The notes under the pieces are model-generated. The model did not search any database and was not told the DNA's origin. It was given only the letters and a program-made list of their open reading frames with translations. Of a DNA stretch of 64,000 nt, positions 4,334 through 59,842 are shown piece after piece (position 1 is the first letter of the stretch; the number at the start of each line of letters is the position of its first letter). Source of the DNA: Hyaloraphidium curvatum SAG 235-1 (taxonomy: Eukaryota; Fungi; Monoblepharomycota); the NCBI GenBank assembly GCA_025558095.1, contig JAIVFI010000030.1:248001-312000 (forward strand), written 5' to 3'. The translations under genes and the position numbers were made by a program.

Positions 4334-5327
4334 CCTGCTGGGTGAATCACTCTTTTGTCATCTGGTGTGGGTATAATGCGTAGATCTAGATGTGCCGATC
4401 AAATTGAGGCCTGCTGTGTCCATTGGCTCCTTGAACGTTGGAAGTGAATGTTTTTTCTTCCATTTCCCGTGAGAAGGAGGACTGGAAGAAGGAGTATCAG
4501 GGGGAAGGCACGAGAGTTTGAGAAGGAGAGGAAGAAGCTGGAGAAGAAGCTGCGGAATATTGCGGAGCACAAGAACTCTGAGCTGCTGGATTGACTCTTC
4601 AGGCCATGCATGTGAGAGCCTAAGGGATACTACTGCTTGGGAAGACTTATGCGGGGCAGAAGGGCAAGTGTGCAAGCCCGTGCCCTTTGCGGAGCTGTTA
4701 TGCCACACAGTGTATACAAGGAGATGGTGGCCAGCGCCGAGTGCATGACCAAGATCAAGGAAGACCCCAGGCTCACGTTCCCATGCCACCGACCACTTCC
4801 CAAGGCCACGATCATGCCTTTTGGGAACCTGCTGCGCCCCATGACCCTCAACGAGCTCGAGAAGGTCCTGAAGTAACAAGGCTCTTGACGGCAGGGCAGC
4901 GGACAAGGATGGGATCAGGCTTGAGTTCGTCAAGTACAGGACCACTTTGCTGAAGTAAACAAAGCTGTTGTCGATCTCCTCAACGACGTGCTCAATGGCA
5001 TCAACGTGCAAGACTGGGGCCAGACACTGCTGGTAATGCTACACAAGAAGGGACCCAAGAACGTCGTGGCTGGCAACTACTGGGGCATCAGCATAGAGAG
5101 GGCATTGGAGAAGGTCTTTTCCCTGGTCTGAAACTCTTGGCTAGCTCCCTGGGTTGAGTGCAACAAGCTGCTGAAAGGCTCGCAGTTTGGATTCTGCGCA
5201 GGGAGGTCAACCCTTCATGCAGTGTTCCTTGCTGAGGTGCTCTTCTCGCTCCTTGGCCAACGCATGCAAGGAGAAGCTGATCATGGTTTGTAGATTTCAC
5301 AAAGGCTTTTGACACGGTGGAGCACCT

Positions 5328-5419
5328 TGTTGAGACACACTAGACCACTGAGCCAAAGAGTAGCGCACGTCGGTGGCATCCAGTAGCCTAGGCATCTAGG
5401 GCATGCACATCTCCCAACA
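5328..5419. mobile_element. 92-bp solo LTR (TRIM-sized)
   Basis: TGTTGAGA...TCCCAACA termini, flanked by 5-bp TSD CACCT (5323-5327 and 5420-5424); absent from the homologous position in LINE copy 2. Confidence 0.85.
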
Positions 5420-5702
5420 CACCTGAGGTTGTGGAAGAAGCTGGAGGAGATAGGTGTGCCCAAACAGATTGTTGACATGTTTGAGATGGCATCAGGATGG
5501 GACCAAGTGGGACTTCATCAAGTTCCTGACCGAGTGAAGCAGGGGGACCCCCTCCTCTCATCATATCACTGTTCTTCGTCTTGTTCATCAACAATATTGC
5601 TGCTTTCATGGAGGCCTTTGGTGCAAAGGGGATGGATCTGGGCATGGGGATCGAGGAGGAGGAGGATTAGGAGAGGATGGTCAGTCTAGCTTGCTGGCTT
5701 TG

Positions 5703-8870: not shown

Positions 8871-10975
8871 ACCTCAGACCACATGGCCCTGAGCCTGACC
8901 ATCAAGGCCAACCTCGTGCGACCAGCTGCGAAGGAGAACAAGCCGCACTGCAAGCCCGTGCCGTGCGACTTCCACTTCCTCGCAATAATGCGAAACCTCT
9001 ACGACGAGCCCTGGGTCAAGAAGGCGAGGCAATGCAAGAGTACGAGCAACTTCAAGCTGGATCCGACAAGTGCAACCGGCTCATCCAGATCATGGCAGTG
9101 GTGAACAAGGTCGTGAAGAAGAAGTACGACAAGGTCAGCGTACACGAAGAGGCGGACAAGTTCCTCAACGGCTTTGCGGACTCGGCAGAGAGGGGCCGAG
9201 ATCGATCGGAAGCTGTCACGTCACGCCTTCTTGAGCTGCGATCCCTCAAGGAGAAGGACGAGTGGAAGAAGGAGTACCAGGGGAAGATGCGGGAGCTGGA
9301 GAAGGAGCGGAAGAAGTTGGAGAAGAGGATGCGGAGGGTTGCGGAGCGAGAGAACTCCAAGCTGCTAGAGCGACTCTTCAGGTGAGAGCCTAAGGGGTAC
9401 TACCAGCTGCTTGGAAAGGCTCACGCAAGGCGCAAGGGCAACCCCGTGCCCTTTGCAGAGCTGGTGCGCCACATGGAGATGGTCGCCAGCGCCGAGTACG
9501 TGACCAAGATCGAGGAGGATCCAAGGCTCACGTTTCCACCACTTCCCAAGGCCACAATCACGGCTTCTGGAGACCTGCTGCGCCCCATCACCCTCAAGGA
9601 GCTGGAGAGGCAGGGTCTTGAAGAAGGCCCCCAACGGCAAGGCAAAGGACGAGGATGGGATCCGGCTCGAGTTCGTCAAGTACGGGACTGCAGTACTGAA
9701 GCAAGCTGTTGTCAACCTCCTCAACGACGTGCTCAATGGCGTCAAGATGGATGACTGGGGCCAGACACTGCTGGTGATGCTGCACAAGAAGGGGCCCAAG
9801 AACGTGGCTGGCAACTACCGAGGCATCAGCATAGAGAGGACGCTGGAGAAGTAAGGTCTTCTCCCTGGTCTCTAACGCTCGGCTAGCTCCCTGGGCTGAA
9901 TGCAACAAGCTGCTGGAAGGCTCGCAGTTTGGATTCCGTGCACGGAGATCGACCCTTCATGCAGTGTTCCTTGCCGAGGCACTCTTCTCCTTGGCCAAGG
10001 CACGCAAGGAGAAGCTGATCATGGTGTTTGTAGATTTCACAAAGGCTTTTGACACGGTGGAGCGCCCCAGGTTATGGCAGAAGCTGGAGGAGATGGGAGT
10101 ACCCAAACAGGTTGTTGACATGTTCGAGATGGCGTTCGGGCGCGTGTGGGGACGGCTGCGGGATGAAGTGTTGGAACCTATGCATTGCTACGTTGTTGGG
10201 ATTGATATGCACTGGAGGGAATCTTGCAACAAGGGGGAGTGTTGGAATGGATTGTTGCTTCGATTCTATCTCAATAGGGAGTCTATTGGCGTGTGGGGAT
10301 ACTTGGGTACGACCGGAGGGGTCATCTAGGGACTTGTCATCGCAAGGGAATGGACAACGGGTCAACGTGAAACTGTCCCTCTCCCCATCCCGTCCATCTG
10401 AGTTCTGACCCGGTTCAGACCACTGGGGCTACGTCTTCCCCACGCCCCATAGCCACTCCAACTGTAACACCAACATGAAGACGGGACCAAGTCAGACTTC
10501 ATTAAGTTCCTGACCGGAGTGAAGCAGGGGGACCCTCTCTCGTCGCTGTTCTTCATCTTGTTCATCAACGACATCACTGCTTTCATGGAGGCCAATGGTG
10601 CAAAAGGGATGGATCTGGGCATGGTGTCTGAGGAGGAAGAGGATCAGGAGAGGATGGTCAGCTTGCTGGCTCTGTTCTTTGCAGACGACACCACTTTGAT
10701 CTCGAAGACGGTGAAGGATGCCAAGATGCAGCCGGATCTTTTGTCTGCATATGCCAGTGCCAATGGGCTGGAGATCAACGTCAGCAAGACAGAGTGGATG
10801 GCCAGGAGGATACCTCACGGTGTAAAGCTCATGTACAGGGACCAGGAGCTTCACTTTTGGAGGATGTGTGACATGACCTTTGGCCACATCGGACCATCCC
10901 TGATCCGGGTGGAGAAGCACCGGAGGGATGTCCAAAAGTTGCTGTGCTCTGCGTTTGGCTTTTGCGTGGGCCTTT
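8871..10975 (+). mobile_element. Decayed LINE ORF2 fragment, copy 2 (end of APE domain to RT)
   Basis: Begins at SDHMALSLTI (APE C-terminal SDH). Then KAPNGKA..DGI, NYRGIS, QFGFR, FVDFTKAFDTV, GVKQGDPLSSLFFILFIND, FADD, GLEINVSKT. Stops and frameshifts present. Confidence 0.88.
10169..10475 (+). mobile_element. 307-bp solo LTR, long variant of the 5703-8703 family
   Basis: TGTTGG...CCAACA with TSD TGAAG (10164-10168 and 10476-10480); removing it restores RDEDGTKSDFIKFLTGVKQGD. Confidence 0.92.
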
Positions 10976-10986
10976 GAGTGTTATTA

Positions 10987-11100
10987 GTGGTTTACCAAAA
11001 ATCAGTTGTGGTTTGAAGAAAATCACTTGTGGTTTTAGGAAAATCATACGTGGTTTGTTGAAAAACGCCTGTGGCTCTCAGATTGTCAATTGTGGTTTAC
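10987..11100. repeat. Six-unit array with exact 21-bp period (GTGGTTT-n4-AAAATCA-like)
   Basis: GTGG cores start at 10987, 11008, 11029, 11050, 11071 and 11092. Confidence 0.85.
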
Positions 11101-11771
11101 ACGGACGGAGTGGGGGCGTGAGCAGCGGCAACCGCGCAACTTCGTTGATCCCCTGCATTCGCATCACACAACACAGATCTCGTCTCTTCTGCCTCCAACC
11201 CCCGTCCGCCGCCCTGCGCCGCCCTCCAGCGCCACCCGGCGCCCATCTGCCCCTCCTCCCGCTCGGCTGCCGCCTCTGCCGCTGCCGCCGCCTTGCCCTT
11301 GCCCCACCAAACCGCTGCACATGCACCCGGGCGCCGGCCAATGCAGCTGGGCCCAGTTTGACGCTTTTAGCGAGATGTGGGCGTATCTGGCGGCTGTGGT
11401 GCCATAGACAGCTGATCAGAACGCCGTGATTCGTACGCAGGAGAGGTCACGGAGTGAAGGGCGTGCGGCGCGTCACGTCCGCTCAATCAGACCCTGTTGC
11501 TGGGGATGGATGGATGTGTTTGGAGCCGTCGGATCGAGTTGGAGTTGGTCCTGGAGTTGGATGTTGGACTTGGATGGATGGGTGGATCTTGGCTAGACAA
11601 TAACCTAGGAGGGCGGCTCTAGGGAGAAGGGAATAACACAACAAACACCAGGAACGCCACCTGCCTCATCCGCACCTGTCTCTGGGCGCCTGCGACCAGG
11701 GGAACAAAGGATTAAGAGTCTCAACTGCTCTGACACGTGCCTGCTACCCCTGGAAGTCCGCCCGCGACAGG

Positions 11772-13202
11772 ATGACAGCCAACGATGCCGACAAGCCTAT
11801 CCTGCTCAACACCGGTGAAAACATGGTCCAGTGGGACCGCAAGGCCCCCATCTACCTCAACAAGCTCGGGGTGTACGAGTACGTCGTCAACAACGTCCTC
11901 AGCATCGACTGGCAGCTCGAGCAGGCCCGCAAGAGGGCTGCTGAGCGCAGCAACGCTCCAGGGCTCACCGACCGGCAGAGGGATGCCATCCTTGCCGAGG
12001 AAGAGAAGGCCGCGCACTCGATCCTCACGGAACACAAGTTCAGGACGACGGCCGAAAAGGCCTACGGCGAGCTCATGTTGATGCTCGACGACGTCCTCCA
12101 GGAAGCGTTCGACGAGCCCAAGACGGCCTACGACCTCTGGATCGCGATTCACAAGAAGTTCAAAGTTGGAAAGGCGCGCTTGGTACACGCGTCCCAAGTC
12201 CGCGTAAACAAGTGGCAGTGGGACGCTTCAAAGACTGTGGACCAAAACTTCAACGAGCTGCTGAGTATCAAGTCAGAGAGACTTGCGCACAAGAAACCAC
12301 TTTCAGACTACGACGTGGCTTTGATGGTGACGTTCGCCGAAGGCTTCCCGTTCGCAGAACTCCAAGGATTCTGGGGCCGAGTCATTGACGACGACGGGCA
12401 CTTCGACGAAGACGGCAAGAGCGAGAGTATAACATTCTCATTCAATGGCATGCGGGATGCGGCTAACACAGCCCAAGGAAACAAGATGCCGCATGCACCT
12501 GTCAAGATGACAGCTCCGACGCTCCCGCTCCCGCCCCCTGCCGGATTTGGACCCGGCTTCGCTGCCTATCAGCCGCACCAACAACAAGTTCCCCGTGGTG
12601 GTGGCAACCCCAGTCGGCCTCCGCAGCGCCCCTGGTACGAGCACGGTCGCTACGCTCCGTACCCCAGCTACAGGCCGAGCGGCATGGCTCCTATCCAAGG
12701 CCAGGGCCATGATACGCGGATGCGCGGCCACGGGTTGGCACGTGGCGGCATGCGCGGAGGCCGCGGCTACTACCCCGCGCAGACACTGAGGCCGATGGGC
12801 GGCCCAAGCTACCGCCCGGCTGGTGCTGCCGTTTGGAGGCCGACTCCGGTGACCAGTGAGATCACCTGCCGCGAATGCGGCAAGCCGGGGCACGTGGCAT
12901 CGGCGTGCCCCGACAAGAAGTGCCACAATTGCAACGGCAAGGGGCACGTACAGCGCGAGTGCCCGTCACCGCCCCAGCAGCCGTACGCCATGCTGGCAGA
13001 TGCCCAGATGGAACACAGCGAGGGTGAGCATCGGGTGGTGATGTCAGGGCCGAGGTGCCCGCGCCACGAAGGGGCCGCGGTGCTCGGCGCTTGGTTGAAG
13101 AGGAGGGCCGCGGGCCCCGCGTCGCGAAGGGCCGAGGGCCAGATGCTTGAGAGGAGGGCCGCGGGCCCCGCGTCGCGAAGGGCCGAGGTGCCAGACACTT
13201 GA
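11772..13202 (+). CDS. Copia Gag (two CCHC knuckles); probably spliced at 13024
   Basis: KTAYDLWIAIHKKF, CRECGKPGHVASAC, CHNCNGKGHVQREC; the unspliced tail runs into a tandem repeat. Confidence 0.9.
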   Translation: MTANDADKPILLNTGENMVQWDRKAPIYLNKLGVYEYVVNNVLSIDWQLEQARKRAAERSNAPGLTDRQRDAILAEEEKAAHSILTEHKFRTTAEKAYGELMLMLDDVLQEAFDEPKTAYDLWIAIHKKFKVGKARLVHASQVRVNKWQWDASKTVDQNFNELLSIKSERLAHKKPLSDYDVALMVTFAEGFPFAELQGFWGRVIDDDGHFDEDGKSESITFSFNGMRDAANTAQGNKMPHAPVKMTAPTLPLPPPAGFGPGFAAYQPHQQQVPRGGGNPSRPPQRPWYEHGRYAPYPSYRPSGMAPIQGQGHDTRMRGHGLARGGMRGGRGYYPAQTLRPMGGPSYRPAGAAVWRPTPVTSEITCRECGKPGHVASACPDKKCHNCNGKGHVQRECPSPPQQPYAMLADAQMEHSEGEHRVVMSGPRCPRHEGAAVLGAWLKRRAAGPASRRAEGQMLERRAAGPASRRAEVPDT

Positions 13203-13400
13203 GAGGAGGGCCGCGGGCCACGCGTCGCGAAGGGCCGAGGTGCCAGACGCTTGACGAGAAGGGCCGCGGTGCCCTGCGCCGCGAAGGGGCCGCGGTGCCC
13301 GGCGCCTAGGGGAAGGGCCGCGGTGCCCCGCGTCGCGAAGGGCCGAGGGCCAGACGCTTGAAGAAGAGGGCTGCGGGCCCAGCGCCACGAAGGGGCCGCG
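13050..13400. repeat. GC-rich ~51-bp degenerate tandem repeat between gag and pol
   Basis: Recurring GAGAGGAGGGCCGCGGGCCCCGCGTCGCGAAGGGCCGAGG units at ~13098, 13149 and 13201, plus partial copies. Confidence 0.85.
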
Positions 13401-13856
13401 GGCCCGGCGCGTGGAGTGTGGGGCGCGGGTTACTGGGGACCGACGGTTGAGGTTCGCGCCCCTCGGCGCGTTGGCACGCGATCGGCTGATCGAACGTGCG
13501 TGCCGACGCGGGTGTAGCGCGCGCCCAACGGTCCAAACACTCTCGGAATTCCTCGCTTGACAAACACTAACTTCCGCCTCTCCTCTTTCGCTATCTAACT
13601 TCAATCTGCTTCGTACACTCTCTGTTCATTTCGGTAAGGCGACGCCGCTGCCGAAGGTAACTCACCCGCCTCGCACCCAGATCGATCTTCATCGCAGCGT
13701 TGCCTGACAGCCTTCGGCTTCCTGGGATATGGCTCGATGGATGGTGACAGTGAGGGAGCCGATCTCAGCTATGTCGGCTACAACCACGAGCCCGGCGAGG
13801 GAGCGACCTACGGCGACGGCTTCGACTACTAACTACGTGGCGGCGGGGAGGCCGCT

Positions 13857-16800
13857 GTGATGCCGACCGTGATGGCCAACGCCGTTTCGGGGGAGGACAT
13901 CGACGGCGGCATGGTTCAAGCTCAACACGCTCGGGCATACATCAACCATGTCCGCGCGAACAACTGCGATTCCTTCTTCGATTCTGGCGCGAGTCGCAAC
14001 TCCACCAATACCCTAAGCGACCTGACCAAAGTCTACTCTATACCCAAGGTCGTTGTGCATGGACTTACGGGGCCCGTGGAGGTGTCACAGGCTGGCACCA
14101 TGTACGTGCGTTTCCGCACCAGCGGACCCGTTGTTCGGCTTGACAACGTTCTCTTCATGCCGAGCACACCGTGCCGCCTATTCTCGGAAACGGCATTGGC
14201 CGCCGCCGGCATTCGATCCAAGAACCGCTACCTGACGGACAAGCAAATGCAGAAACTGCTATACCTTGTGGACGGCACGGAGTTATGCACTCTTCCCCAG
14301 CAGAACGGCGTTTTCCCGATGTCGATCGAGGTCGTCAAACCGGGGTCAACGCTGCAGGCCATGTGGGGACTCACCGACGCAGATTTGATCCGACTGCGCG
14401 GGGTACGCATGTCACGTCTCTACGACCGTCACCTGTGGCATGCCCGGTGTGCGCACGCTCACATTGAGCGCATCCGGATAGCGCAGAGGTCGGGCGCAGT
14501 GCTTGGCCTTGAGAACGTCGATCTGGGCCCCGAGTCGGAGGTTATCGAGTGCGACGTCTGCCTGCACGCCAAGCTGACAACCGCGCCGTTCTGCCCCTCG
14601 ATGCGTGAGCACGTCAAGGATGTTATGGATCTCTGGCACGTTGACCTCAAGGGCCCGGTCGATATCACTTCCGTGCACGGCGACCGCTACTGGATGGATG
14701 TCAAGGACGAGTGGTCGCAGGAGCTTTGGTCGATCCCCCTGAAGACCAAGGACGAAGCGGCACCTCTCCTTCAGCAGCTCATCGTGTGGGCCGAGACGCA
14801 GACCGGGAAACGCCTCAAGCACCTCCAGTCTGACCAGGGTACCGAGCTCGGGCGGTGGAACGCAAGGGAGCTGGGCTGGTTCCAGACCTGGTTACGTGAA
14901 CGAGGCACTCACTTCCGGGTCTCCATAGCCGATACGCCTCAACAGAACGCGGTACCCGAACGCGAGCATCGTTCCCAGGTCGAAGGGGTACTTGCGCTCT
15001 GCATCCAGGCTGACGTCGAGAAGCGTTTCTGGAACTACGCCCTCGCATACAAGACTGAGGTCCGCAACATGCTCCCAACGGTGAAGACGATGCAACGGGG
15101 CACAAACGGAACGGTTACCACGCCGCATGAGCTGTGGACGGGGACTAAACCCGACCTGTCACGTCTCCGCACGTTCGGGTCGGAGTGCTGGTACGGCATC
15201 CTCCCCAGCCAGCGCAAGGCTCTGGACGACCGTGCACACCGTGCAATCTTCCTCGGTTTCCCGAAGCATCTGAAGGCGTACACGGTTCTGGATCTGACCA
15301 CAGGCAAGATAGTTCATGCTCGATCGGTTGTCTTCAACGAGCGCTATTCTAAACGCTCACCCGGCTCGTTCCGCGAGATTGACGAGCTGGGGAAGCAACG
15401 ACCTTTTGCTCTTGTGCATCCTCGACTTCCCCCCCGGCTCTCCAAGCCGGTGGATCCAGCGATGGATGAAGACAGCGACGATGATCAGCGGACACAGCGC
15501 AAGGATGCGGGAACGGGCCCCCAGGAATCTGCACAGCGACATGAGGCGCACGAAGCGTACGAGTGGGAGCTCCTTGAGGAAGAGATTGAGTACCCACCGG
15601 AAGCAGAGCGGGAGGAAGTGGATGCTGGCGATGGCGATGAGCCATGTGATGCGCAGCATCCCCTCGCTGGACCTGATGACGGTCTGCCAGATCCCCTCAT
15701 CATGCCCTACGCCATGATTGCGACTCCACTGACTTGCTCTCCTTCTTTTCGCTTCCCAGTCTTTGAGACGTGGCGCATTCCAGCAACGTGTGCCCCGCAT
15801 CCAGACACGAGCCCGGTGACCCTGCTGTCGGTGCATGGTGTCACCATCCCGCGCACATACAACGAATCGCAGAGGTCACCGCATGCGGCTCAGTGGGAGG
15901 AAGCGCGGCAGGAGGAGAACAAGTCGATTCTTGAGATGGGTGTGGTCGAGGAGACGGAACTCCCCACTGGTGACGAGGACAAGGTGGTGCCCTCGCACTA
16001 CGTCTACGACGTCAAGAAGGACCAGAACAACAACGTTACGCGCTTCAAGGCACGCTTGGTGGCGGATGGAAACCGCCAATCCGAGCAAACATACGACGAT
16101 ACGTTCGCTGCCGTTCCTAACCAAGTCGTTTTCCGCCTCTTCCTTCTTCTTGTTGCCACGCTGGGCCTCCTCTGTGATCACTGGGACATCAAGACGGCGT
16201 TTCTGCATGCTCCGCTGGACTACATTGTCTACATCAGGCCGCCTCCGGGATGGCGATTTCTCAAGGAGTCTTCCTCGCGCACAGTGCTTCGGCTGCTGAA
16301 GAGTCTCTATGGATTACGGCAAGCGATGCGCTTGTTCCTTGCAATGCTTGATCATTTCCTTCGCCAGGCTGGATTCGTGAAGCTGGCCTCCGAGAGCTGT
16401 CTCTACGTGCGCTTCGCGGCCGGCCGCATTATGATCGTCTTTGTCTACGTGGACGACTTGCTGGTTGCCGCCACCTCACTGCTGGAGATCGATGAATTGT
16501 TTGCCAGTCTCAAGCAGCATTTCAACATCAACTTGCTGGGCCCTGTCACTTACTGCTTGGGCGTGCACATCCGTCGCGACACCGGCACTGGTACAATCTC
16601 ATTGTCGCAGACGGCATACATCGACCGCGTCCTCCGCGACTTCGCATTCACGCGTGATGTTCCCAGCAAGGAGACAAAGTCTGCTCTCACGCCGATGCGC
16701 CCGGATGCACTCCAGATGCTGCGCCCATTCAACCCCACGGTATTTGACAGCCTGCCAACGAAGATCCAAGACGACGTCAAAAGCTTCAACTACAAGGGCC

Positions 16801-17489
16801 TGATTGGATCTCTACTTTGGATTGCTATTACAGCACGGCAAGACATTGCCTTTGCGGTTGTTTTTCTTTCTCGCTTTGCCAACAGCTTTGGGCCTCTTCA
16901 CATCAAGGCGCTTCGAGATGTTTTGCGCTACCTGCGCCGCACCCGTACCTATGGACTCGTTCTTGGTCGTCGTCCTGCGTCTGGTGATCGCTTGGATCTC
17001 TGTGCATATGCGGATGCCGATTTTGCTGGCTGTGTGATGACCCGCAAGTCGACCACGGGTCTCGTCATCCTCATGGGTGATTCCAGCATTGCCTGGCTGA
17101 CCAAGCGGCAATCCATCGTTGCACAGTCTACTACGGAAGCCGAGTATGTTGCTATGGCGCATGCAGTTCGCAACATTCTCTGGCTGCGCTCCATCCTGCA
17201 GGAACTCGGCTTTGCGCGGACGACACCTACGCGACTTTTCGAGGACAACAAGTCTGCTGAACAGCTCGCTCGTGATCCTAAGTTCCACGAGCGCACGAAG
17301 CACATCGATATCAAGTACCACCTCGTTCGCGACACTGTGCAAAATGGAACCATTGAAACTGCGCGGGTGCTGTCAGACGACAACTTTGGGGACGGCTTTA
17401 CCAAGCCTTTAGCTCCGGCCCCTTTTGACATTTTCCGTGCGCGCATTGGTGTTGTGGATCTTGATCCGGGTTCGGCTTCCAGTACGTGA
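13857..17489 (+). CDS. Copia Pol polyprotein (protease, integrase, RT, RNase H), uninterrupted
   Basis: FFDSGAS; LWHARCAH..CDVC; HVDLKGP..SDQGTE..PQQNAVPER; RFKARLVA, YVDDLL; YADADFAG, STTEAEY, EDNKSA, KHIDIKYH. Confidence 0.97.
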   Translation: MMPTVMANAVSGEDIDGGMVQAQHARAYINHVRANNCDSFFDSGASRNSTNTLSDLTKVYSIPKVVVHGLTGPVEVSQAGTMYVRFRTSGPVVRLDNVLFMPSTPCRLFSETALAAAGIRSKNRYLTDKQMQKLLYLVDGTELCTLPQQNGVFPMSIEVVKPGSTLQAMWGLTDADLIRLRGVRMSRLYDRHLWHARCAHAHIERIRIAQRSGAVLGLENVDLGPESEVIECDVCLHAKLTTAPFCPSMREHVKDVMDLWHVDLKGPVDITSVHGDRYWMDVKDEWSQELWSIPLKTKDEAAPLLQQLIVWAETQTGKRLKHLQSDQGTELGRWNARELGWFQTWLRERGTHFRVSIADTPQQNAVPEREHRSQVEGVLALCIQADVEKRFWNYALAYKTEVRNMLPTVKTMQRGTNGTVTTPHELWTGTKPDLSRLRTFGSECWYGILPSQRKALDDRAHRAIFLGFPKHLKAYTVLDLTTGKIVHARSVVFNERYSKRSPGSFREIDELGKQRPFALVHPRLPPRLSKPVDPAMDEDSDDDQRTQRKDAGTGPQESAQRHEAHEAYEWELLEEEIEYPPEAEREEVDAGDGDEPCDAQHPLAGPDDGLPDPLIMPYAMIATPLTCSPSFRFPVFETWRIPATCAPHPDTSPVTLLSVHGVTIPRTYNESQRSPHAAQWEEARQEENKSILEMGVVEETELPTGDEDKVVPSHYVYDVKKDQNNNVTRFKARLVADGNRQSEQTYDDTFAAVPNQVVFRLFLLLVATLGLLCDHWDIKTAFLHAPLDYIVYIRPPPGWRFLKESSSRTVLRLLKSLYGLRQAMRLFLAMLDHFLRQAGFVKLASESCLYVRFAAGRIMIVFVYVDDLLVAATSLLEIDELFASLKQHFNINLLGPVTYCLGVHIRRDTGTGTISLSQTAYIDRVLRDFAFTRDVPSKETKSALTPMRPDALQMLRPFNPTVFDSLPTKIQDDVKSFNYKGLIGSLLWIAITARQDIAFAVVFLSRFANSFGPLHIKALRDVLRYLRRTRTYGLVLGRRPASGDRLDLCAYADADFAGCVMTRKSTTGLVILMGDSSIAWLTKRQSIVAQSTTEAEYVAMAHAVRNILWLRSILQELGFARTTPTRLFEDNKSAEQLARDPKFHERTKHIDIKYHLVRDTVQNGTIETARVLSDDNFGDGFTKPLAPAPFDIFRARIGVVDLDPGSASST

Positions 17490-18054
17490 TGGGCCTGAGG
17501 CCAGCGTTCTCTGCGAGCCGGACCCTGCCGGGAATCTCTGCCCGTGATGAGCCTGAGGCTAGTAGGCAGCCGTTCCTTGGTTTTCTGGGGGCGTTTTCTC
17601 TACGTGTAACTCTGGATTGTATTGTGTCTTGTACTTTCTTTGCATGTATGGTCTCTGGGGGAGCCTTGTACGGCAATTGGATCGCCCGGGCTTGGGGGGA
17701 GGTGTGACGTGCGATGTGACATCAGGGAGCCTGGCCTAGGCAGCCCGAGGAACTCAATCCCGGGGCGTGGAGGAGCACGCGGTGGGGGACTCCACTCGAT
17801 CCACTCGCCTCCAAATGGGGGAGTGTTGCTGGGGATGGATGGATGTGTTTGGAGCCGTCGGATCGAGTTGGAGTTGGTCCTGGAGTTGGATGTTGGACTT
17901 GGATGGATGGGTGGATCTTGGCTAGACAATAACCTAGGAGGGCGGCTCTAGGGAGAAGGGAATAACACAACAAACACCAGGAACGCCACCTGCCTCATCC
18001 GCACCTGTCTCTGGGCGCCTGCAACCAGGGGAACAAAGGTCCAGGGTATCGCCC

Positions 18055-19524
18055 ATGGCCCTCGACGACGACGAGGATGTGGAGGTCGAGGACGTGCCGA
18101 TCCGATTGGCAAAACGCCCCTCGAACCGCGATCGGAAGACGGGGCAATCGATTTCGAGCAACGCACGCGCCTGGGAGCGCATCGACATGCTCATTGCATC
18201 GGGCAAAGCCAACTACCCTGGTCTGATCACCCTGGACACCAAATTTCTCGAATCCCTCCGAGATGGACAAAAGAACAATGGCGATCGGTTCTCTCCCGTG
18301 AGCATCCTTCAGTACCACTCGCACGCATGCTTGCTTGGGCGCCTTGTCGTGGCAAAGAAGCGCGGCATTGCGCGGGAGAACACCTTCCTAGAAGTCCCGA
18401 CGGATGACCGCGATGTTCAGACCTACCGTGAATGGCTTCGGTACTACCCGATCGACCGTCTCTGGCGCACTGTTGAACGCCACACGGCCAGCTTTGCCAG
18501 TCAATCAGTCTTTGCCGTCACCTTGCAGAAGCTCTTTACGCTCCTTCGCGGATCGCCAGATCATGCGGACCCCATGTTCTTTGGCGAGAAGATCAAGGAA
18601 CTGGCGAAGCTCACTAAGAAGCAGAAGGCACTGCAGCTTCCGCAGCTAAGCGGCTCGGATCTCCAGGTGGAGTATCGCCTGCTCCGTCAAAAGGTGGAAA
18701 GCTTCGCCCGGGATGTTCTCACGCGATACGAAACGGCGTCACCGGACGTAGTGCGCCGCGGGCTAGGAGACATCCAAGCGGCGACCATTTGTGCAATCTA
18801 CGTACTGCATCCACCAAGCAGATCTGACTACGCTTTCCTTCGCTTCACGCCCACGAAGAACACCAATTTTTACGACGGCGGAGAGGATTGCATTGTCCTC
18901 AACAACTTCAAAACAGCAGCCTCCATCGGAAGGACGTACGTCAAGGTGGAGAACGAGCTTGTCCGACGCCTTCTGCATCTGCTCGTTGATCGGATCCGCA
19001 GCCAGGACGGCGACCGCTACGTGTTCCAAAGTCGCCCGGGCAAGCCGTTTTCGACGGAATCGGGTTTCGGACAGCATGTGGGCCACTGCTTCAAAAAGGT
19101 CACAGGCGACGCCCTGCGCCCGACTTCATTGCGCCGCTTGTACATCAGCTTCCACGCCTGCGGCACCGTCGACGAGAGCGGCGAACATTGCGTGCCTAGA
19201 GCCGAGGAGAACGCTGTCCTCGCCCGAAGCATGATGCACAGTGCAGCCCAACAGGCAACGTACCGTCGACAGCCATCATTGCAGCACATCAAGTCCACGC
19301 TCCCGGTGAACGACCCGATCGTGCCTTCCACCACGACCGCTGCCGCGCTGGACGCCGTTGAGCGCATGCAAGCTGTGCAGGGAGGCGACAGTCGGGAGCA
19401 GCGTCTGGCGTGGGAACAGGCGAAGCGGGATTTGGTAAGGAAAGCGGTAGAAATCGATGAAGCGCGCGAAGCCGCGGCAAAACGCCACCGTGAGCGTCTG
19501 CATCAGAGGCGGCTGTCAAATTAG
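18055..19524 (+). CDS. Tyrosine recombinase/integrase (resembles virophage OLV11/Polinton-like-virus type), intronless
   Basis: Catalytic set R256 (YVLHPPSRSDY), K286 (NNFKT..IG), R360 (TSLRRLYIS), H395 and Y403 (LARSMMHSAAQQATY). The family assignment comes from recalled motif pattern, not a search. Confidence 0.85.
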   Translation: MALDDDEDVEVEDVPIRLAKRPSNRDRKTGQSISSNARAWERIDMLIASGKANYPGLITLDTKFLESLRDGQKNNGDRFSPVSILQYHSHACLLGRLVVAKKRGIARENTFLEVPTDDRDVQTYREWLRYYPIDRLWRTVERHTASFASQSVFAVTLQKLFTLLRGSPDHADPMFFGEKIKELAKLTKKQKALQLPQLSGSDLQVEYRLLRQKVESFARDVLTRYETASPDVVRRGLGDIQAATICAIYVLHPPSRSDYAFLRFTPTKNTNFYDGGEDCIVLNNFKTAASIGRTYVKVENELVRRLLHLLVDRIRSQDGDRYVFQSRPGKPFSTESGFGQHVGHCFKKVTGDALRPTSLRRLYISFHACGTVDESGEHCVPRAEENAVLARSMMHSAAQQATYRRQPSLQHIKSTLPVNDPIVPSTTTAAALDAVERMQAVQGGDSREQRLAWEQAKRDLVRKAVEIDEAREAAAKRHRERLHQRRLSN

Positions 19525-19536
19525 CCAGGGAAGGTG

Positions 19537-19995
19537 TCAAAGGAGCCGTTCTCCGCAGTAGATGTCGGCGAGCTCACGATCTTGCATCATGTCTTGCGCA
19601 ACGATGCGGAGGACCGTGAGGAGGCCGCGACGCCAACTCAGTGACCATTTGTTGGCGGGGGAGGTCAGGAGAGCAAGAACGAGTTCGTGGTTCCTCACCC
19701 AATCAAACGTGCGTGGGATGTCGCTCCATGAGAGCGTGGCGGCGACGTGCATGAGGCGTTTCCACGTTTTGCGTTCCGCAAGATCCCCACTGACGTGGCT
19801 GGCGGCACAATGGAGTCGGCAGAGCAGCATGAGACGGCGTCGGTAGGTGAGTTGCGTGGATGTCGACCACACGTACTCCTTTCCGCCGGCCTCCATCAAC
19901 AAGGAGATCGGATGCGTTGCGATCGCTGTTTTGTCGACCGCGGTCTGGGCCGGGCGCCCGAAGCGGGTGGCTTGCTGCGGTTCCGCCTCAGCCAT
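19537..19995 (-). CDS. Small helical protein A, stand-alone recombinase core-binding-like domain paralogue
   Basis: WSTSTQLTYRRRLMLLCRL...IPRTFDWVR...SWRRGLLTVLRIV...DRELADIYCGERL; shares motif with 20485-20934 and 21000-21488. Confidence 0.75.
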   Translation of the reverse strand: MAEAEPQQATRFGRPAQTAVDKTAIATHPISLLMEAGGKEYVWSTSTQLTYRRRLMLLCRLHCAASHVSGDLAERKTWKRLMHVAATLSWSDIPRTFDWVRNHELVLALLTSPANKWSLSWRRGLLTVLRIVAQDMMQDRELADIYCGERLL

Positions 19996-20062
19996 CGTCT
20001 TGTGCTGCAATCTTGTCGGCTATCGGAGGATGTTTTTCATCGCGGTTGGACGGAGCAAGGCC

Positions 20063-20533
20063 ATGGGGCGTTACGACGATGAGCTAGCGGACGTGGTGTT
20101 CAAAGCTGCGCAAATTGCAAATTGGAGTCCGAGCACAACTTTATTCAACAAACGACTGGTTCGATGCATTGCCGCGTTCTTCACGGCCGCCCAGCGCTTG
20201 AAGCAGGAGGGCGTGACAAACCAGGACTTCTTCGTGCTCCAGCGTCTCGCACGCCGCATTCGCGGACCCTTCGACACGACCGTTCTTCGCCGACCCAAGT
20301 TCTTCAAATGGCTGATGAAGAAGTCCGGGTGGGCCGACACTCGGATACGCAATGCGAGGCATGCGATGGGTGTAGCAGCTCATGCTGCGTTTGGGGCGGG
20401 GGCAGATGAGCCGTTTGCAAAGGCACCGAAACGTATCCGGCGTGTCGAGAAAGTGACCCTCGTCAGCAAGCGACGGCGGCGGCGTCAGGCGGGGGGAGCG
20501 GCCGAGGTTGCGGTGGAGGCGAGCGAGGCTTGA
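20063..20533 (+). CDS. Small helical protein B, more divergent paralogue with basic NLS-like tail
   Basis: KAAQIANWSPSTT...IAAFFTA..RL...LQRLARR...; KRRRRR tail. Confidence 0.65.
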   Translation: MGRYDDELADVVFKAAQIANWSPSTTLFNKRLVRCIAAFFTAAQRLKQEGVTNQDFFVLQRLARRIRGPFDTTVLRRPKFFKWLMKKSGWADTRIRNARHAMGVAAHAAFGAGADEPFAKAPKRIRRVEKVTLVSKRRRRRQAGGAAEVAVEASEA

Positions 20534-20934
20534 CGGTGAAGGCGTTCCTGAAAGCTCTTCTCGTTGTAAGCGGTCGCCAGGTACGGGTCGTGCAAAACGA
20601 GATCACAAATGATCCCCAGGGTCACAAACGCTTGTCGCCGCCATTCTCTGCGGTGGGGGTTGCCGTCCGCGTTCAGAATCCAGTCCAACGAGACAACGTC
20701 ACGCGCAAAGTTGAAATCGTCCGGCAGGTCGACGTCCTTCGACTGGCGTGCCAACTCGTCAACGTCGTCGAACGAAAAGCCCTCGTCTCGTTCCTGCAAA
20801 CGAAGCGCAGTGTAGGCGGCATGCAGCTTGGCCAGGTGGAGCGACGCAGATGCAACCTTTTTCGTCGTGCTTTCGCTCCAGAGAAGTTGTTTTCCGGCTT
20901 TTCGCATGGCCTTGGCGTACGCTGCGGAGGCCAT
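20485..20934 (-). CDS. Small helical protein C, paralogue
   Basis: WSESTT...LAKLHAA...DELARQ...LPDDFNFAR...EWRRQAFVTLGII...LHDPYLATAY. Confidence 0.75.
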   Translation of the reverse strand: MASAAYAKAMRKAGKQLLWSESTTKKVASASLHLAKLHAAYTALRLQERDEGFSFDDVDELARQSKDVDLPDDFNFARDVVSLDWILNADGNPHRREWRRQAFVTLGIICDLVLHDPYLATAYNEKSFQERLHRQASLASTATSAAPPA

Positions 20935-20999
20935 GGTTGTGTCAAACGTGACTTGGAAATTCCACGTCCTCTCCGGGCGGCGGCGCCCTGCTTCTTAGA

Positions 21000-21488
21000 C
21001 TAGTCCATGTCGTCGGGCATATCTGCGAAGTCCCCGATGGCGACCGGCGTCGGAGGCGTTGACGGCTGTTGATCCCCTTTCTTCAGGTTTCGAACCGAGT
21101 ATCGGCTTGCGAGAACGGGATCGGAGAGGAACAATTCGGCTGCGAGGCGGAGGGCCGAGATGGACGAGCGCACGTAGCTGGGGCTCCCACCCAACCTCGC
21201 AATGATGCCCAGGACGACGTCGCGTTGACGAAGCCAACCAAAGTCCCGGGGCAGGGAAGACCGGGGTAGGCGACGGGCAAGGTCGTCAATGAGAGCCCAT
21301 CCCTCCTCCGGGATCTCGCCGGGCTCGACCGTGTCGAGGCGCGATCTCAGCCGTCGAAGGGCGACAAATAGCGCGCAAATGCGACAGAGACGGGCGCCGT
21401 AGCTGTAGGCGGATGATTTGGACCATTTGGCGGCCTTGGCCACGCGGGAGATGCTTCGTTCGATGAGATCGGGCTCCGCGGATGGCAT
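21000..21488 (-). CDS. Small helical protein D, paralogue
   Basis: WSKSSAYSYGARLCRICALFVA...DDLARR...LPRDFGWLR...SYVRSSISALRLA...LSDPVLASRY. Confidence 0.75.
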   Translation of the reverse strand: MPSAEPDLIERSISRVAKAAKWSKSSAYSYGARLCRICALFVALRRLRSRLDTVEPGEIPEEGWALIDDLARRLPRSSLPRDFGWLRQRDVVLGIIARLGGSPSYVRSSISALRLAAELFLSDPVLASRYSVRNLKKGDQQPSTPPTPVAIGDFADMPDDMD

Positions 21489-21527
21489 TGACGTGACCGG
21501 CGAAAAAGCCGCGATCGACGCACACGC

Positions 21528-22142
21528 TCAGCCCCACGCAAAAGACACCCAGCACCCTCTTCTTCGTTTCCTCGGCCGCGCTTCGGCTTCATCGTCCGCT
21601 TCCCAGTCATCCACCAAAGCTTCGATCTCTTGGAGTCGCACTATCTGGCGATCGATGTCGGCAATGAGTCTACTTGTTTCCCGGTCATGGTCCTCCAACC
21701 ACCGCTGCCGGCGTCGCGCGGCGTCTTCGACCACCCGGGTGCGCTCCGTACGCAGCTCTTGAAGCTGCGAGGTGGGATCGGTCGGGTGTTGCTCGTCGTC
21801 CTGGAGATCGAAGCAAGATCGGAAGGCCGTGAGAACCGCGTCGTCGAGCACAGCAGGCTCAACAAACCGAATCGCCGAACGGCGGTTTCGATCGATGACA
21901 CGGCGGTAGAGGCAGATGGGTTGGAATTCTCGGAAGAGGGCGGCCACGCGTCGAGCGAGGTCGTCGTCGTCGGTGAGGGAGGCACCGAGGAGCTCGGCCA
22001 GCTTGTTTCGATGCACGCCTTCGCGCGGATAGGGTGGCTGGTTGGAGGTGAGGTGGTTCAGGTTCGACCAGCCGATCAGCACGCGCTCGGCTTCCAAAGC
22101 CTGACCGCGATCGGCGAAGGCAGCTCGCACTACATGATCCAT
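21528..22142 (-). CDS. Hypothetical protein with coiled-coil and NLS; N-terminus weakly GIY-YIG-like
   Basis: 204-aa intronless ORF; DRGQALEAERVLIGWSNLN; heptads LQELRTERTRVVED..; RPRKRRR. Confidence 0.55.
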   Translation of the reverse strand: MDHVVRAAFADRGQALEAERVLIGWSNLNHLTSNQPPYPREGVHRNKLAELLGASLTDDDDLARRVAALFREFQPICLYRRVIDRNRRSAIRFVEPAVLDDAVLTAFRSCFDLQDDEQHPTDPTSQLQELRTERTRVVEDAARRRQRWLEDHDRETSRLIADIDRQIVRLQEIEALVDDWEADDEAEARPRKRRRGCWVSFAWG

Positions 22143-22345
22143 GTCACAATGCGCGAAGCGTTCGGCTGGGGACGATCACGGTCGACCCGTCGGACGCGGT
22201 CAGCAGGACGCATTGCCGCACGGTGGACAACCTGCCGGCCTCTGCTTCGACGGAGCGGTCGATCTGGAACAAGTTTCTGGGAGTCAACGACGATTTCTTT
22301 TGGTTCGTCCGCCCCACAAATAGATGGCATTTTCTGTTCCACAGT

Positions 22346-22401
22346 TCAGCAAATGCAGAGCGACACCAGAAGCTCAGCAAATGCAGAGCGATGCCAGAAG
22401 C
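22346..22401. repeat. 28-bp tandem duplication
   Basis: TCAGCAAATGCAGAGCGA(CA/TG)CCAGAAGC twice. Confidence 0.9.
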
Positions 22402-22723
22402 TGCAGACCAGACTGGAAGCACTGGGCCGCAAGTGGAAAATGGAGACCTGGCTCTGGGCTCTTAGCATCAAGGAGTTCTCGACCAGCCCAGAATCAAATT
22501 GAGGCAGCAGAAGGAGAAGGTCCTCAACTCTATTGCAGTGTTGTCTCAAAGTCCACGAAGGACATCAGAAAACTGGGAAAAGAAAAAGTCTAGTAGTGAG
22601 CTGAAAGCAGGAGTTGGTACAACCACGAGCAAAACACCTACGTTCCCGGCATGTGCCATACAGTGCCATGCACTCCAGTGAGCACGACCAACTTGTCCAA
22701 AGCAGGATGTGTTCTGTTGCAGT

Positions 22724-23608
22724 TTATACTTGCAGTGATCTTTGCACAATACCTCGGACCTTCGCATTGAATGCGCCACGGTCTTCGCGATAGAGCTTCT
22801 GCCGCAGATATGGGGTATGGTAAACTCCCTGCAATAGCCGATGCCACGCTTGGCTTACAGAAGCATCAATGTTGGCTCCACTCTCGTCGTTTGGCTCAGC
22901 AAGCATGGATACAACGCTGAGCAAAATTTTCTCTATGCTCTGAACTGGGCTCCAGCGCTCGTTGCTTGACTCGTACTGGTTCGGGTCTTCCCCTGGAGGA
23001 TGCAGAATGGAGATGCAGACGCGCCCATCCGCATAGACGTTTGGATGAAACATCTCCCCTGAAGTGGATATCAGGTTGAGGCACCAACGCGCGAATGGAC
23101 GAAGAAGCACCTGTGAACCGCATAACCTGTGGAGGTAGGTCAGATCCAGGTAGCGCTTTGCCCGTGGAACACCAACTGGTGGACTCAGTGGGTAGTCCTT
23201 GGGAAAGTGTAACGTGGCCTCAAAGATCCCTCCCTCGTATGGCGTCTGAGGAAATGTCCGCGGCGGAAGCGTTGGAGCAGCCATCGCCGCATTCATGGGA
23301 ACAAACTCACGCCTTCGGGCCCGCTACGCGACAATCAGCGTCGCACGGGTCCGTGACGGGTGACGGGCGGCGCTACCTTATCAGTGCCTCCCACTCAAAG
23401 TAATTGTCCTCCGACATGGGGCCTGTTGACCATGGCTGTGTCAACTGTTCTGCCGACGAGCCGAATTCCCGTTTTACCAGCCGTGATCCCCTCCGGCGGG
23501 TTGACAGTCAACTCTGGATGATGGTGACGACGAATGAACGACACGCTCGCACGAAGCCTAGTCGCACGGACCTCGGTACTCGGTCATCAGCCGGCGAAGA
23601 GCGGTCAT
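22724..23608 (-). CDS. UBC7: Ubiquitin-conjugating enzyme Ubc7/UBE2G, multi-exon
   Basis: [11 protein letters not shown]..; [10 protein letters not shown]; [39 protein letters not shown]. Confidence 0.93.
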
Positions 23609-23804
23609 GTCTCCGATGACGACGAGCAACGCGTCAATGACGTGCTGGACTGCCTTGCTTCGCACGTCGTGTGTATGTTGACGCGTCGCTCACGTCGTGT
23701 GTATGTTGACGCGTCGATCGAGAGGACCGGCGGCGGCTGTGATGCAGTGAGAGCCAGTTCGAAACTCCGCCCTCCCCGCAAATGACCCGGTAGCTGAGGA
23801 GGCC

Positions 23805-57926: not shown

Positions 57927-58094
57927 TGTTTTCTTGATGAACGAATTGATGATGACTTCGGTACTTGGCGCAGCATCGTCCCGCAAGGAGCCCACCAGCG
58001 GGCCACTAGCGCGGCTCGGCGACACGCAAATCGACAAACTTCGAGTGACCGGCTCCCCCATCGCCGCCACCTTTCCCGCGCCGGAGCCGCCATC

Positions 58095-59734: not shown

Positions 59735-59842
59735 CACATTCTTGAACCCGTTTTGCGAACAGCGTGATGTGTGCGCCCCAGAGAAGGGGTGACCGCCGTC
59801 CCCGTTTTCCTCTCGCGATTGCGTTTCTGAACCCGGCCCGCG

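What the first reader, a model, noticed from the sequence alone, without database searches (positions are those of the whole stretch)
18055..22340. Candidate undescribed element: tyrosine recombinase plus four stand-alone paralogues of its own DNA-binding domain
Seen: in a genome where most genes carry many introns, six ORFs are packed into ~4.2 kb with no introns, gaps of 12-67 bp and one 49-bp overlap. ORF 18055-19524 keeps the YR nucleophile and most catalytic residues (R256, K286, R360, H395, Y403; the box-II His appears as Thr). Four neighbouring 149-162-aa ORFs on both strands are mutual paralogues, and their motif recurs in the recombinase N-terminus (FSPVSILQYHSHACLLGRL...EWLR...FAVTLQKL...FFGEKI versus WSTSTQLTYRRRLMLLCRL...DWVR...LLTVLRIV...YCGERL). 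Known: YRs have a helical core-binding (CB/SAM-like) domain ahead of the catalytic domain. As I recall them, the PPxRxDY / FKT..G / LRxxYIS / MxHS...Q..Y motifs resemble virophage OLV11/PLV recombinases rather than DIRS, Crypton or Starship DUF3435. Inference: this is a capsid-less or reduced YR mobile element whose catalytically dead CB-only proteins act as directionality factors, specificity adaptors, dominant-negative regulators or DNA-coating proteins. I know of no described element with this architecture.
Basis: partly seen in the sequence, partly recalled or inferred. Interest (0 to 1): 0.92.

Follow-up and report, generated by a model that had tools for sequence, protein, structure and literature searches.

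The report
Compact recombinase cassette in a chytrid genome
A real but unusual tyrosine recombinase gene sits beside four related small genes and a fifth unrelated gene in a tightly packed, intron-free 4-kb block inside a transposon-rich patch of what is probably a chytrid fungus genome; it looks like a resident integrative element or its remnant, but neither its mobility nor the claimed kinship between the small proteins and the recombinase's DNA-binding domain could be shown.

Summary
ORF 18055-19524 is a genuine tyrosine recombinase (YR). Its family profile hits the solved XerC-like, XerA and XerH structures. R256, K286, R360, H395 and Y403 are kept in at least 39 of 41 relatives. The box-II His position is never His in this clade.

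The four small ORFs are true mutual paralogues: leave-one-out HMM E-values run from 6e-7 to 4e-15. Their proposed link to the YR N-terminus is not established. HMMER finds nothing. hhalign gives P between 3e-4 and 8e-2 depending on settings, and decoys come close. Foldseek on a moderate model finds no fold match.

The closest relatives are divergent paralogues in Hyaloraphidium curvatum: YR at 31%, an N-terminal-only protein at 42%, and ORF6 at 58%. More distant relatives lie on two IMG/VR viral contigs next to primase-helicases.

No capsid genes, terminal repeats, second copy or tRNA target was found. A young copia element abuts the YR start codon. The adjacent RT is a degraded non-LTR type, so this is not DIRS/Ngaro.

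Best reading: a resident YR integrative element or its remnant, a new variant of a known kind. Mobility is unproven.

The parts
18055..19524 (+). Tyrosine recombinase gene, 489 aa, intact. It has an acidic N-terminal tail, a helical N-terminal region (about residues 75-200), a catalytic domain (about 240-410) and a charged helical C-terminal tail.
   Evidence: ORF. 41 relatives by exhaustive phmmer. The family profile hits XerC-like 4a8e (8e-6), XerA and XerH. Catalytic R/K/R/H/Y are conserved and box-II His is absent family-wide. 8 of 41 relatives hit Pfam Phage_integrase.
19537..19995 (-). Small ORF s1, 152 aa from the first ATG (the ORF is open back to a TTG at 20010). Basic, pI 9.5. Member of the four-gene family.
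20063..20533 (+). Small ORF s2, 156 aa from ATG. Very basic (pI 11.4) with a Lys/Arg-rich C-terminal run. The most divergent member of the family. Its 3' end overlaps s3 by 49 bp.
   Evidence: (E 6e-7 with an HMM of the other three)
20485..20934 (-). Small ORF s3, 149 aa, family member.
21000..21488 (-). Small ORF s4, 162 aa, family member. AlphaFold2 model is all-alpha, with about 6 helices over residues 7-129 and a disordered tail.
21528..22142 (-). ORF6, 204 aa, acidic, with a coiled-coil-like C-terminal half and a short basic run. Unrelated to the small family and to the YR. It has a 58%-identical full-length paralogue on another contig of Hyaloraphidium curvatum.
22143..22723 (.). Right flank up to the stop codon of the neighbouring E2 gene. 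It contains a 28-bp tandem duplication at 22343-22398. The right boundary of the cassette lies somewhere in here.
11495..18039 (+). Neighbour: Ty1/copia LTR retrotransposon (gag ORF, pol ORF with RVT_2 and rve). The 216-bp LTRs are 215/216 identical. Its 3' LTR ends 15 bp before the YR start codon.
9538..11426 (+). Neighbour: degraded non-LTR (R2-like) reverse-transcriptase remnant, with its reading frame split over several frame pieces. A second, 79-98% similar copy lies at about 4792-5925.
22724..23296 (-). Neighbour: last exon(s) of a host ubiquitin-conjugating enzyme gene. Further intron-bearing host genes follow: AP sigma, a WD40 protein and a P-type ATPase.

Best explanation
The block 18055-22142 is a resident tyrosine-recombinase integrative element, or the surviving part of one. 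It belongs to a lineage carried by chytrid-grade fungi (Hyaloraphidium, Phlyctochytrium) whose recombinase is distantly shared with small virus-like elements found on environmental viral contigs.

Shown:
- The recombinase keeps every residue needed for the phosphotyrosine chemistry except the first His of box II, which the whole clade lacks.
- Four tandemly amplified, mostly basic, all-helical 150-aa proteins and one coiled-coil protein are packed around it without introns.
- All six reading frames are intact although the paralogues have drifted to about 25% identity. That implies long-term selection on the proteins.

Inferred:
- The recombinase would cut and rejoin DNA at a short core site through a covalent 3'-phosphotyrosyl intermediate and a Holliday junction. 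The block would then enter and leave chromosomes as a circle, as proposed for Cryptons and known for phage and ICE integrases.
- The small proteins are accessory nucleic-acid-binding factors of the element.
- Whether they descend from the recombinase's N-terminal domain is open; I put it at about 40%.
- The present copy may no longer be complete, because a young copia element abuts its left edge.
For: - YR identity and intact catalytic set. Cre and topoisomerase IB are the top Foldseek hits, though not significant and obtained with a poor model.
- Compact intron-free packing on both strands, next to intron-bearing host genes.
- Real four-way paralogy with intact frames.
- Location in an 18-kb transposon island between Vps39 and E2 host genes.
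- Divergent family members on three other contigs of the same genome: YR P0003 at 31%, N-terminal-only P0002 at 42%, ORF6 paralogue P0049 at 58%. Another chytrid also has one (P0012).
- Distant YR relatives sit on IMG/VR contigs next to S3H/D5-type primase-helicases, endonuclease VII and GIY-YIG genes.
- YRs are known integrases of virophages (PMC8547959). Cryptons are YR-only DNA transposons without long terminal repeats that sometimes carry an extra gene (PMC3212892).
Against: - No terminal direct or inverted repeats, no target duplication, no tRNA target and no second copy in the window.
- GC and GC3 are indistinguishable from the copia element and host exons.
- The known paralogues are only 31-58% identical, which fits an old gene family as well as an active element.
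- No homologue of the small family was found anywhere else. That search was limited to proteins sharing words with the query and 84-266 aa long.
- No relatives were found in IMG/VR for the close family, nor in phage records.
It is therefore unknown whether the six genes travel together.
Confidence: 0.5

Rival explanations
1. One reading: the four small proteins are stand-alone copies of the recombinase's own core-binding (SAM-like) domain. They would act on the same DNA sites as regulators, adaptors or competitors of the full enzyme.
For: - Score is 24-28.6 and P is 3e-4 to 5e-3.
- It exceeds reversed, column-shuffled and 150 block-permuted decoys: mean 13.2, max 24.3.
- Helix order in the s4 model matches the helix order predicted for YR residues 80-165.
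- Three of the four small proteins are basic.
- P0002 shows that an N-terminal-only derivative of this YR family is annotated in the same genome.
- Stand-alone YR N-terminal domains have a precedent in ALOG proteins (PMC3537659).
Against: - HMMER sees nothing in either direction.
- The hhalign signal falls to P 4e-3 or vanishes with another match-state rule. The tool's own run returns only a spurious match at the catalytic Tyr motif.
- Negative controls reach scores of 16-22.
- The signal drops to P 0.02-0.04 when only close or only distant YRs are used.
- There is no Pfam SAM-like integrase domain or ALOG hit.
- There is no PDB sequence hit to any recombinase.
- There is no Foldseek hit in PDB or BFVD, although the model is only moderate (pLDDT 66).
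Confidence: 0.2
2. Host gene cluster: a domesticated recombinase-derived gene and lineage-specific small genes that are fixed in the genome and no longer part of any element.
For: - Composition and GC3 are host-like.
- All frames are intact despite deep divergence.
- Paralogues are annotated as ordinary proteins at 31-58% identity.
- No element ends are detectable.
- Domestication of Crypton YRs is documented (PMC3212892).
Against: - Domesticated YR derivatives usually lose catalytic residues, whereas here the set is intact.
- Intergenic gaps of 12-67 bp and a 3' overlap are atypical for the neighbouring host genes.
- The block lies in a transposon island.
Confidence: 0.2
3. Fragment of an integrated polinton-like virus, virophage or giant-virus-associated element. 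Its capsid and replication genes would have been lost or cut off by the retrotransposon insertions on the left.
For: - Virus-like gene packing.
- Distant YR relatives on an IMG/VR contig with an S3H primase-helicase, endonuclease VII and GIY-YIG, and on a giant-virus MAG contig with an AEP-PriCT-D5 primase-helicase.
- The left edge is disrupted by copia and a non-LTR remnant.
Against: - No capsid, ATPase, protease, polymerase or primase-helicase gene lies anywhere between the two host genes.
- The close family has no IMG/VR relative.
- There is no compositional contrast with the host.
- The small-family HMM finds nothing on the two viral contigs.
Confidence: 0.08
4. DIRS/Ngaro-type retroelement: the reverse transcriptase to the left and the YR would belong to one retrotransposon split by the copia insertion.
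For: An RVT_1 reverse transcriptase lies on the same strand upstream of the copia element.
Against: - The best solved relatives of that RT are R2 non-LTR proteins.
- It is degraded while the YR block is intact.
- Its second copy at about 4.8-5.9 kb is not followed by a YR.
- There are no split or inverted terminal repeats.
- None of the 41 YR relatives carries an RT or RNase H domain.
Confidence: 0.02

Closest known systems
Crypton DNA transposons (YR-only eukaryotic transposons; PMC3212892)
   Same: A eukaryotic nuclear element built around a single tyrosine recombinase, without an RT and without long terminal repeats. Some Cryptons carry one extra gene. They are found in fungi.
   Different: This YR has no GCR1_C (CryptonF) or DUF3504 (CryptonA) signature, and none of its 41 relatives has one. 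It lacks the box-II His. It is accompanied by five intron-free extra genes. The short terminal direct repeats that mark Crypton ends cannot be assessed from one copy.
Tyrosine recombinases of virophages, polinton-like viruses and giant-virus-associated elements (PMC8547959 for YRs in virophages)
   Same: The nearest relatives with context outside fungi are YRs on IMG/VR contigs beside primase-helicase genes. Gene packing is dense and uses both strands.
   Different: Similarity is distant (E about 1e-7, about 30% over the catalytic domain only). There are no capsid, packaging or replication genes here.
Xer/Cre-type tyrosine recombinases (PDB 4a8e, 5hxy, 5jjv; Cre)
   Same: The profile matches over the catalytic domain. 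R, K, R, H and Y are conserved. The layout is two domains, with a helical N-terminal part.
   Different: Ser/Thr/Asn stands in place of the HxxR histidine across the clade. The single sequence gives no Pfam hit. It has long acidic and basic terminal extensions and a eukaryotic host.
ALOG proteins: stand-alone derivatives of a YR N-terminal DNA-binding domain (PMC3537659)
   Different: ALOG carries a zinc-ribbon insert and is recognisable by profile methods. The small ORFs here give no ALOG or SAM-like Pfam hit, and their link to any YR domain is unproven.

Membership tests
Tyrosine recombinase superfamily | Catalytic Arg-Lys-(His)-Arg-His/Trp-Tyr set in the right order and spacing | tested here: met
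   R256, K286, R360, H395 and Y403 are kept in 39-41 of 41 relatives. The HxxR His is replaced by S/T/N/A/Q/D in all of them, so this is a clade-wide variant.
Tyrosine recombinase superfamily | Significant profile similarity of the catalytic domain to solved recombinases | tested here: met
   The family profile hits 4a8e at 8e-6, 3nkh at 7e-5, 5hxy at 3e-4 and 5jjv at 2e-3. 8 of 41 relatives hit Pfam PF00589. The query alone gives no Pfam hit.
Crypton | Group signatures: GCR1_C C-terminal domain (CryptonF) or DUF3504-type YR (CryptonA) | tested here: not met
   There is no such Pfam hit in the query or in any of the 41 relatives.
Crypton | Short (4-6 bp) direct repeats at both termini, defined from multiple copies | not testable with these tools
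   Only one copy is visible. The left edge is occupied by a copia LTR. The paralogue loci could not be fetched.
DIRS/Ngaro YR retrotransposons | RT/RNase H of the DIRS type in the same element, with split direct or inverted terminal repeats | tested here: not met
   The neighbouring RT is R2-like non-LTR and degraded. No such repeats were found.
Starship | DUF3435 'captain' recombinase | tested here: not met
   There is no PF11917 hit in the query or its relatives.
Polinton-like virus / virophage | Major and minor capsid proteins, packaging ATPase, protease, and a replication module | tested here: not met
   None lies between the flanking host genes by Pfam or PHROGs. Capsid proteins of these viruses often escape Pfam, but every ORF of the block is accounted for and all are too small.
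YR core-binding (SAM-like) domain, for the four small ORFs | Significant sequence-profile or fold similarity to the N-terminal four-helix domain of a tyrosine recombinase | tested here: inconclusive
   hhalign P ranges from 3e-4 to 8e-2 depending on settings, and decoys reach scores up to 24. HMMER is negative. Pfam, PDB and Foldseek are negative. The model is of moderate quality.

The most novel reading that the evidence does not exclude
This would be a previously undescribed class of compact, capsid-less tyrosine-recombinase element of early-diverging fungi. Its recombinase belongs to a His-less clade shared with small virus-like elements. Its cargo would be an amplified family of free-standing derivatives of the recombinase's own DNA-binding domain, acting on the element's sites.
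Probability: 0.15. Interest if true: 0.8.

Novelty: new variant of a known kind. Interest (0 to 1): 0.5.

Why it matters
Eukaryotic tyrosine-recombinase elements are few and poorly understood: Crypton, DIRS/Ngaro and Starship. This recombinase belongs to none of them by their Pfam signatures. It defines a small clade, 41 representatives among 1.84 billion proteins, that lacks the box-II histidine and links chytrid fungi with virus-like contigs.

If the six genes prove to travel together, this would add a new compact element type to early-diverging fungi. It would also give a possible bridge between cellular YR transposons and the integrases of small eukaryotic DNA viruses.

The amplified small-protein family has no detectable relatives and is a clean target for structure determination. 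If it does derive from the recombinase's N-terminal domain, it would be a second natural case, after ALOG, of that domain living on its own.

Tried and rejected
- Pfam, PHROGs, NCBIfam and PDB sequence searches of all six proteins gave nothing usable for the single sequences.
- The search for homologous proteins returned only the query itself for the YR. It returned nothing for the small-family profile and one paralogue for ORF6.
- Both metagenome-contig scans (P0004, and P0005 with P0004) found no locus.
- Viral-contig scans with P0015, the close YR family, P0046 and P0028 were empty. Only P0006 gave loci.
- A genome-contig scan with P0010 was empty. tblastn against phage records was empty.
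The loci of P0002, P0003, P0004 and P0049 were therefore never seen, and this is the main gap.
- The single-sequence AlphaFold model of the YR was poor (pLDDT 48). Its Foldseek list is only suggestive.
- ORF6 as a fifth member of the small family was rejected.
- The DIRS-like reading was rejected.
- A shared promoter motif upstream of the six genes was not found.
- The antisense ORFs 19847-20533 (long form), 20530-21003 and 21630-22502 were treated as by-products of high GC.

One search printed raw hhalign output, including that program's own consensus lines.

Full report
**1. What is in the sequence**

- YR, 18055-19524 (+, 489 aa)
- s1, 19537-19995 (-, 152 aa from the first ATG)
- s2, 20063-20533 (+, 156 aa)
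- s3, 20485-20934 (-, 149 aa)
- s4, 21000-21488 (-, 162 aa)
- ORF6, 21528-22142 (-, 204 aa)

They are separated by 12, 67, 65 and 39 bp, and s2 and s3 overlap by 49 bp at their 3' ends. All six are uninterrupted.

The window is 55-70% G+C, so long chance ORFs are common. Several antisense ORFs overlap the block. ORF length alone therefore proves nothing, and the case for coding rests on homology.

**2. Surroundings**

It has a gag ORF and a pol ORF with RVT_2 and rve. Its 216-bp LTRs are 215/216 identical. The 3' LTR ends 15 bp before the YR start codon. I could not find a matching 5-bp target duplication.

Left of the copia lies a degraded reverse-transcriptase remnant at 9538-11426. It matches RVT_1, and its best solved relatives are R2 non-LTR proteins. 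A second copy lies at about 4.8-5.9 kb, with a copia-gag-like ORF between the two.

Host genes with introns bracket this island:
- a Vps39-domain gene at the far left;
- a ubiquitin-conjugating enzyme, an AP-complex sigma subunit, a WD40 protein and a P-type ATPase from 22724 rightwards.

The cassette is thus the right-hand tenant of an 18-kb transposon island. Its left edge has been overwritten. Its right edge lies in 22143-22723. No tRNA gene is present. No direct or inverted repeats flank the block.

**3. The recombinase**

The single sequence hits nothing in Pfam, PHROGs, NCBIfam or PDB. It has no relative sharing words with it in the 5.8-billion-protein index.

The exhaustive phmmer scan of 1.84 billion representatives found 41 proteins at E <= 1e-3. 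The close relatives are:
- P0003, 483 aa, 31% identity, full length;
- P0004, 484 aa, 30%, from a metagenome;
- P0002, 220 aa, 42% identity, covering only YR residues 28-239;
- P0005, a fragment.

P0002 and P0003 are annotated proteins of Hyaloraphidium curvatum on two other contigs. P0012 comes from the chytrid Phlyctochytrium arcticum. The rest are metagenomic or Logan proteins. Because the closest hits and the ORF6 paralogue all come from H. curvatum, I infer that the window is from that genome. This is inference only.

The 41-sequence alignment shows near-invariant R256, N271, K286, R360, H395 and Y403. The box-II His position carries S/T/N/A/Q/D and never His. A profile of the alignment hits solved XerC-like, XerA and XerH recombinases and an integrase at 8e-6 to 2e-3 over the catalytic domain. 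Eight relatives hit Pfam Phage_integrase, and none hits DUF3435, DUF3504, GCR1_C, RVT or RNase H.

Even the poor single-sequence model (pLDDT 48) draws Cre and topoisomerase IB to the top of the Foldseek list. The E-values are non-significant, about 0.1.

Conclusion: this is a genuine tyrosine recombinase of a small, distinct, His-less clade.

**4. Virus link**

One distant relative is P0006 (E 9e-8, 32% identity over residues 201-403). It lies on a 10.9-kb IMG/VR contig, L001, beside a 688-aa DUF5906/VapE-type primase-helicase, an endonuclease VII gene and a GIY-YIG gene. A relative of P0006 lies on a 6.7-kb giant-virus-MAG contig, L002, beside a 969-aa AEP-PriCT-D5 primase-helicase.

YRs are known in virophages (PMC8547959). 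No named virophage protein came back from any search, so the specific comparison with the Organic Lake virophage recombinase remains untested.

The close family has no IMG/VR relative and no phage relative.

**5. The small ORFs**

BLASTP gives 25-28% identity and 37-45 bits among s1, s3 and s4, and 24-27 bits for s2.

Leave-one-out HMMs settle the question. Each ORF is retrieved by the other three from the six-frame translation of the whole window, at E 6e-7 to 4e-15. Nothing else scores below 0.03.

Nine columns beyond the start Met are invariant, among them the Trp and two Ser of a Trp-Ser-x-Ser motif, a Pro and two Arg.

Three of the four are basic, and s2 carries Lys/Arg runs.

Retention of four open frames at this divergence argues for selection on the proteins.

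No homologue was found elsewhere. That search saw only proteins of 84-266 aa that share words with the query, so the blank is weak evidence.

**6. Are the small proteins copies of the recombinase's N-terminal domain?**

Against:
- HMMER finds nothing in either direction.
- The tool's hhalign runs give probability below 1%. The second returns only a short match at the catalytic Tyr motif, which is plainly spurious.
- There are no Pfam SAM-like or ALOG hits.
- No recombinase appears in a PDB profile search.
- The s4 model gives no Foldseek match in PDB or BFVD. The model has pLDDT 66 and pTM 0.59, and only one of five models reached that quality.

For:
- The N-terminal region of 34 relatives was used with the query's columns as match states. 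This is stable across three aligners.
- It is above reversed decoys (8.3) and column-shuffled decoys (mean 7.9).
- It is above block-permuted decoys (mean 13.2, SD 2.9, max 24.3; 0 of 150 reach it).

Caveats on that signal:
- Real-sequence negative controls reach 16-22.
- The signal weakens to P 4e-3 over 43 columns, or disappears, under the 50%-gap rule.
- It weakens to P 0.02-0.04 when only close or only distant YRs are used.

I rate the homology at about 40%. It is a lead, not a finding.

P0002 is independent evidence that N-terminal-only derivatives of this YR family are at least annotated in the same genome. It could equally be a truncated gene model.

**7. ORF6**

ORF6 is unrelated to the small family and to the YR. 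It has a 58%-identical, full-length paralogue, P0049, on another H. curvatum contig. It is therefore a real gene family in this genome.

**8. Element or host genes?**

For an element:
- an intact recombinase;
- virus-like packing without introns;
- residence in a transposon island;
- divergent family members on at least three other contigs.

Against:
- no ends, no second copy in the window and no target duplication;
- host-like GC3 of 0.67-0.73;
- low identity between the paralogues.

The test that would decide is whether the six genes are linked at the other loci.

I settle on a resident YR integrative element or its remnant (confidence 0.5). The rivals are:
- a domesticated host cluster (0.2);
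- a virus fragment (0.08);
- a DIRS-type retroelement (0.02, effectively refuted).

**9. Mechanism**

Shown: the catalytic residue set, the two-part domain order, the paralogy and the packing.

Inferred from established knowledge of tyrosine recombinases:
- cleavage through a 3'-phosphotyrosyl link at Y403;
- strand exchange through a Holliday junction between short identical core sites;
- hence integration and excision as a circle, as proposed for Cryptons (PMC3212892).

The family-wide loss of the box-II His, together with an invariant Asn at 271, suggests a modified general acid/base arrangement. This is speculation.

The role of the small basic proteins as accessory DNA-binding factors is inference from charge, helical content and linkage only.

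**10. Comparison and novelty**

The block works most like a Crypton: YR-only, no RT, no long repeats. It fails the Pfam signatures of CryptonF and CryptonA and carries five extra genes. Its enzyme is nearest to YRs of small virus-like contigs, but it has no virion or replication genes.

I file it as a new variant of a known kind, a eukaryotic YR integrative element. It is not categorically new, because mobility, boundaries and the small-protein link are all unproven.

Interest is 0.5: a real, odd cassette and a distinct YR clade, but the most exciting part of the claim did not survive testing as more than a hint.

- The six cassette genes have no breaks.
- The non-LTR RT remnant is broken by frameshifts and stops, at least two. 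I did not count further and list no positions.
- I slipped once by recalling, in my reasoning only, a stretch of a bacterial Xer protein from memory.
- The window is not human.
- No spliced model was needed.

Noticed in passing
window 11495-18039: Apparently young Ty1/copia element. Its LTRs are 215/216 identical, and gag and pol lie in separate ORFs. No matching 5-bp target-site duplication is visible at its two edges, so it may be a recombinant between two copies.
   Followed up: partly
window 13058-13421: Array of about 52-bp G+C-rich tandem repeats inside the copia element, between the gag and pol ORFs (five copies, 62-100% identical).
   Followed up: no
window 4792-5925 and 9538-10837: Two copies (79-98% identical in blocks) of a degraded R2-like non-LTR reverse-transcriptase repeat. 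A 675-aa ORF with copia-type gag and a zinc knuckle (6068-8095) lies between them, so this is a nested transposon island.
   Followed up: partly
window 22343-22398 and 23663-23718: Two unrelated 28-bp tandem duplications. The second lies between the E2 and AP-sigma genes.
   Followed up: no
window 20935-20999 and 21489-21527: The short regions upstream of s3 and s4 both contain the heptamer GTCACGT. No motif is shared by three or more of the six upstream regions.
   Followed up: partly
YR residues 271 and 357 (alignment A2): Across all 41 relatives the box-II His position is never His (S/T/N/A/Q/D). An Asn at position 271 is kept in 40 of 41. This is a clade signature that may mark an altered catalytic arrangement.
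   Followed up: partly
P0002 (Hyaloraphidium curvatum KAI9026291.1): A 220-aa annotated protein, 42% identical to YR residues 28-239 and lacking any catalytic domain. It is either a natural N-terminal-only derivative or a truncated gene model. Its locus could not be fetched.
   Followed up: partly
L001:1-10862 and L002:1-6697: On two IMG/VR contigs, one from a giant-virus MAG, a distant relative of this YR sits next to a large primase-helicase (DUF5906/VapE type on one, AEP-PriCT-D5 type on the other). L001 also carries endonuclease VII and GIY-YIG genes.
   Followed up: partly
window 58000-64000: G+C rises to 0.70-0.78, with many long overlapping ORFs on both strands. Not examined.
   Followed up: no
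window 19537-22142: The profile search with the small family returned nothing, not even s1-s4 themselves, and the ORF6 search did not return ORF6. The YR search did return the YR. So these five ORFs are probably absent from the public annotation of this genome, at least at these lengths.
   Followed up: no
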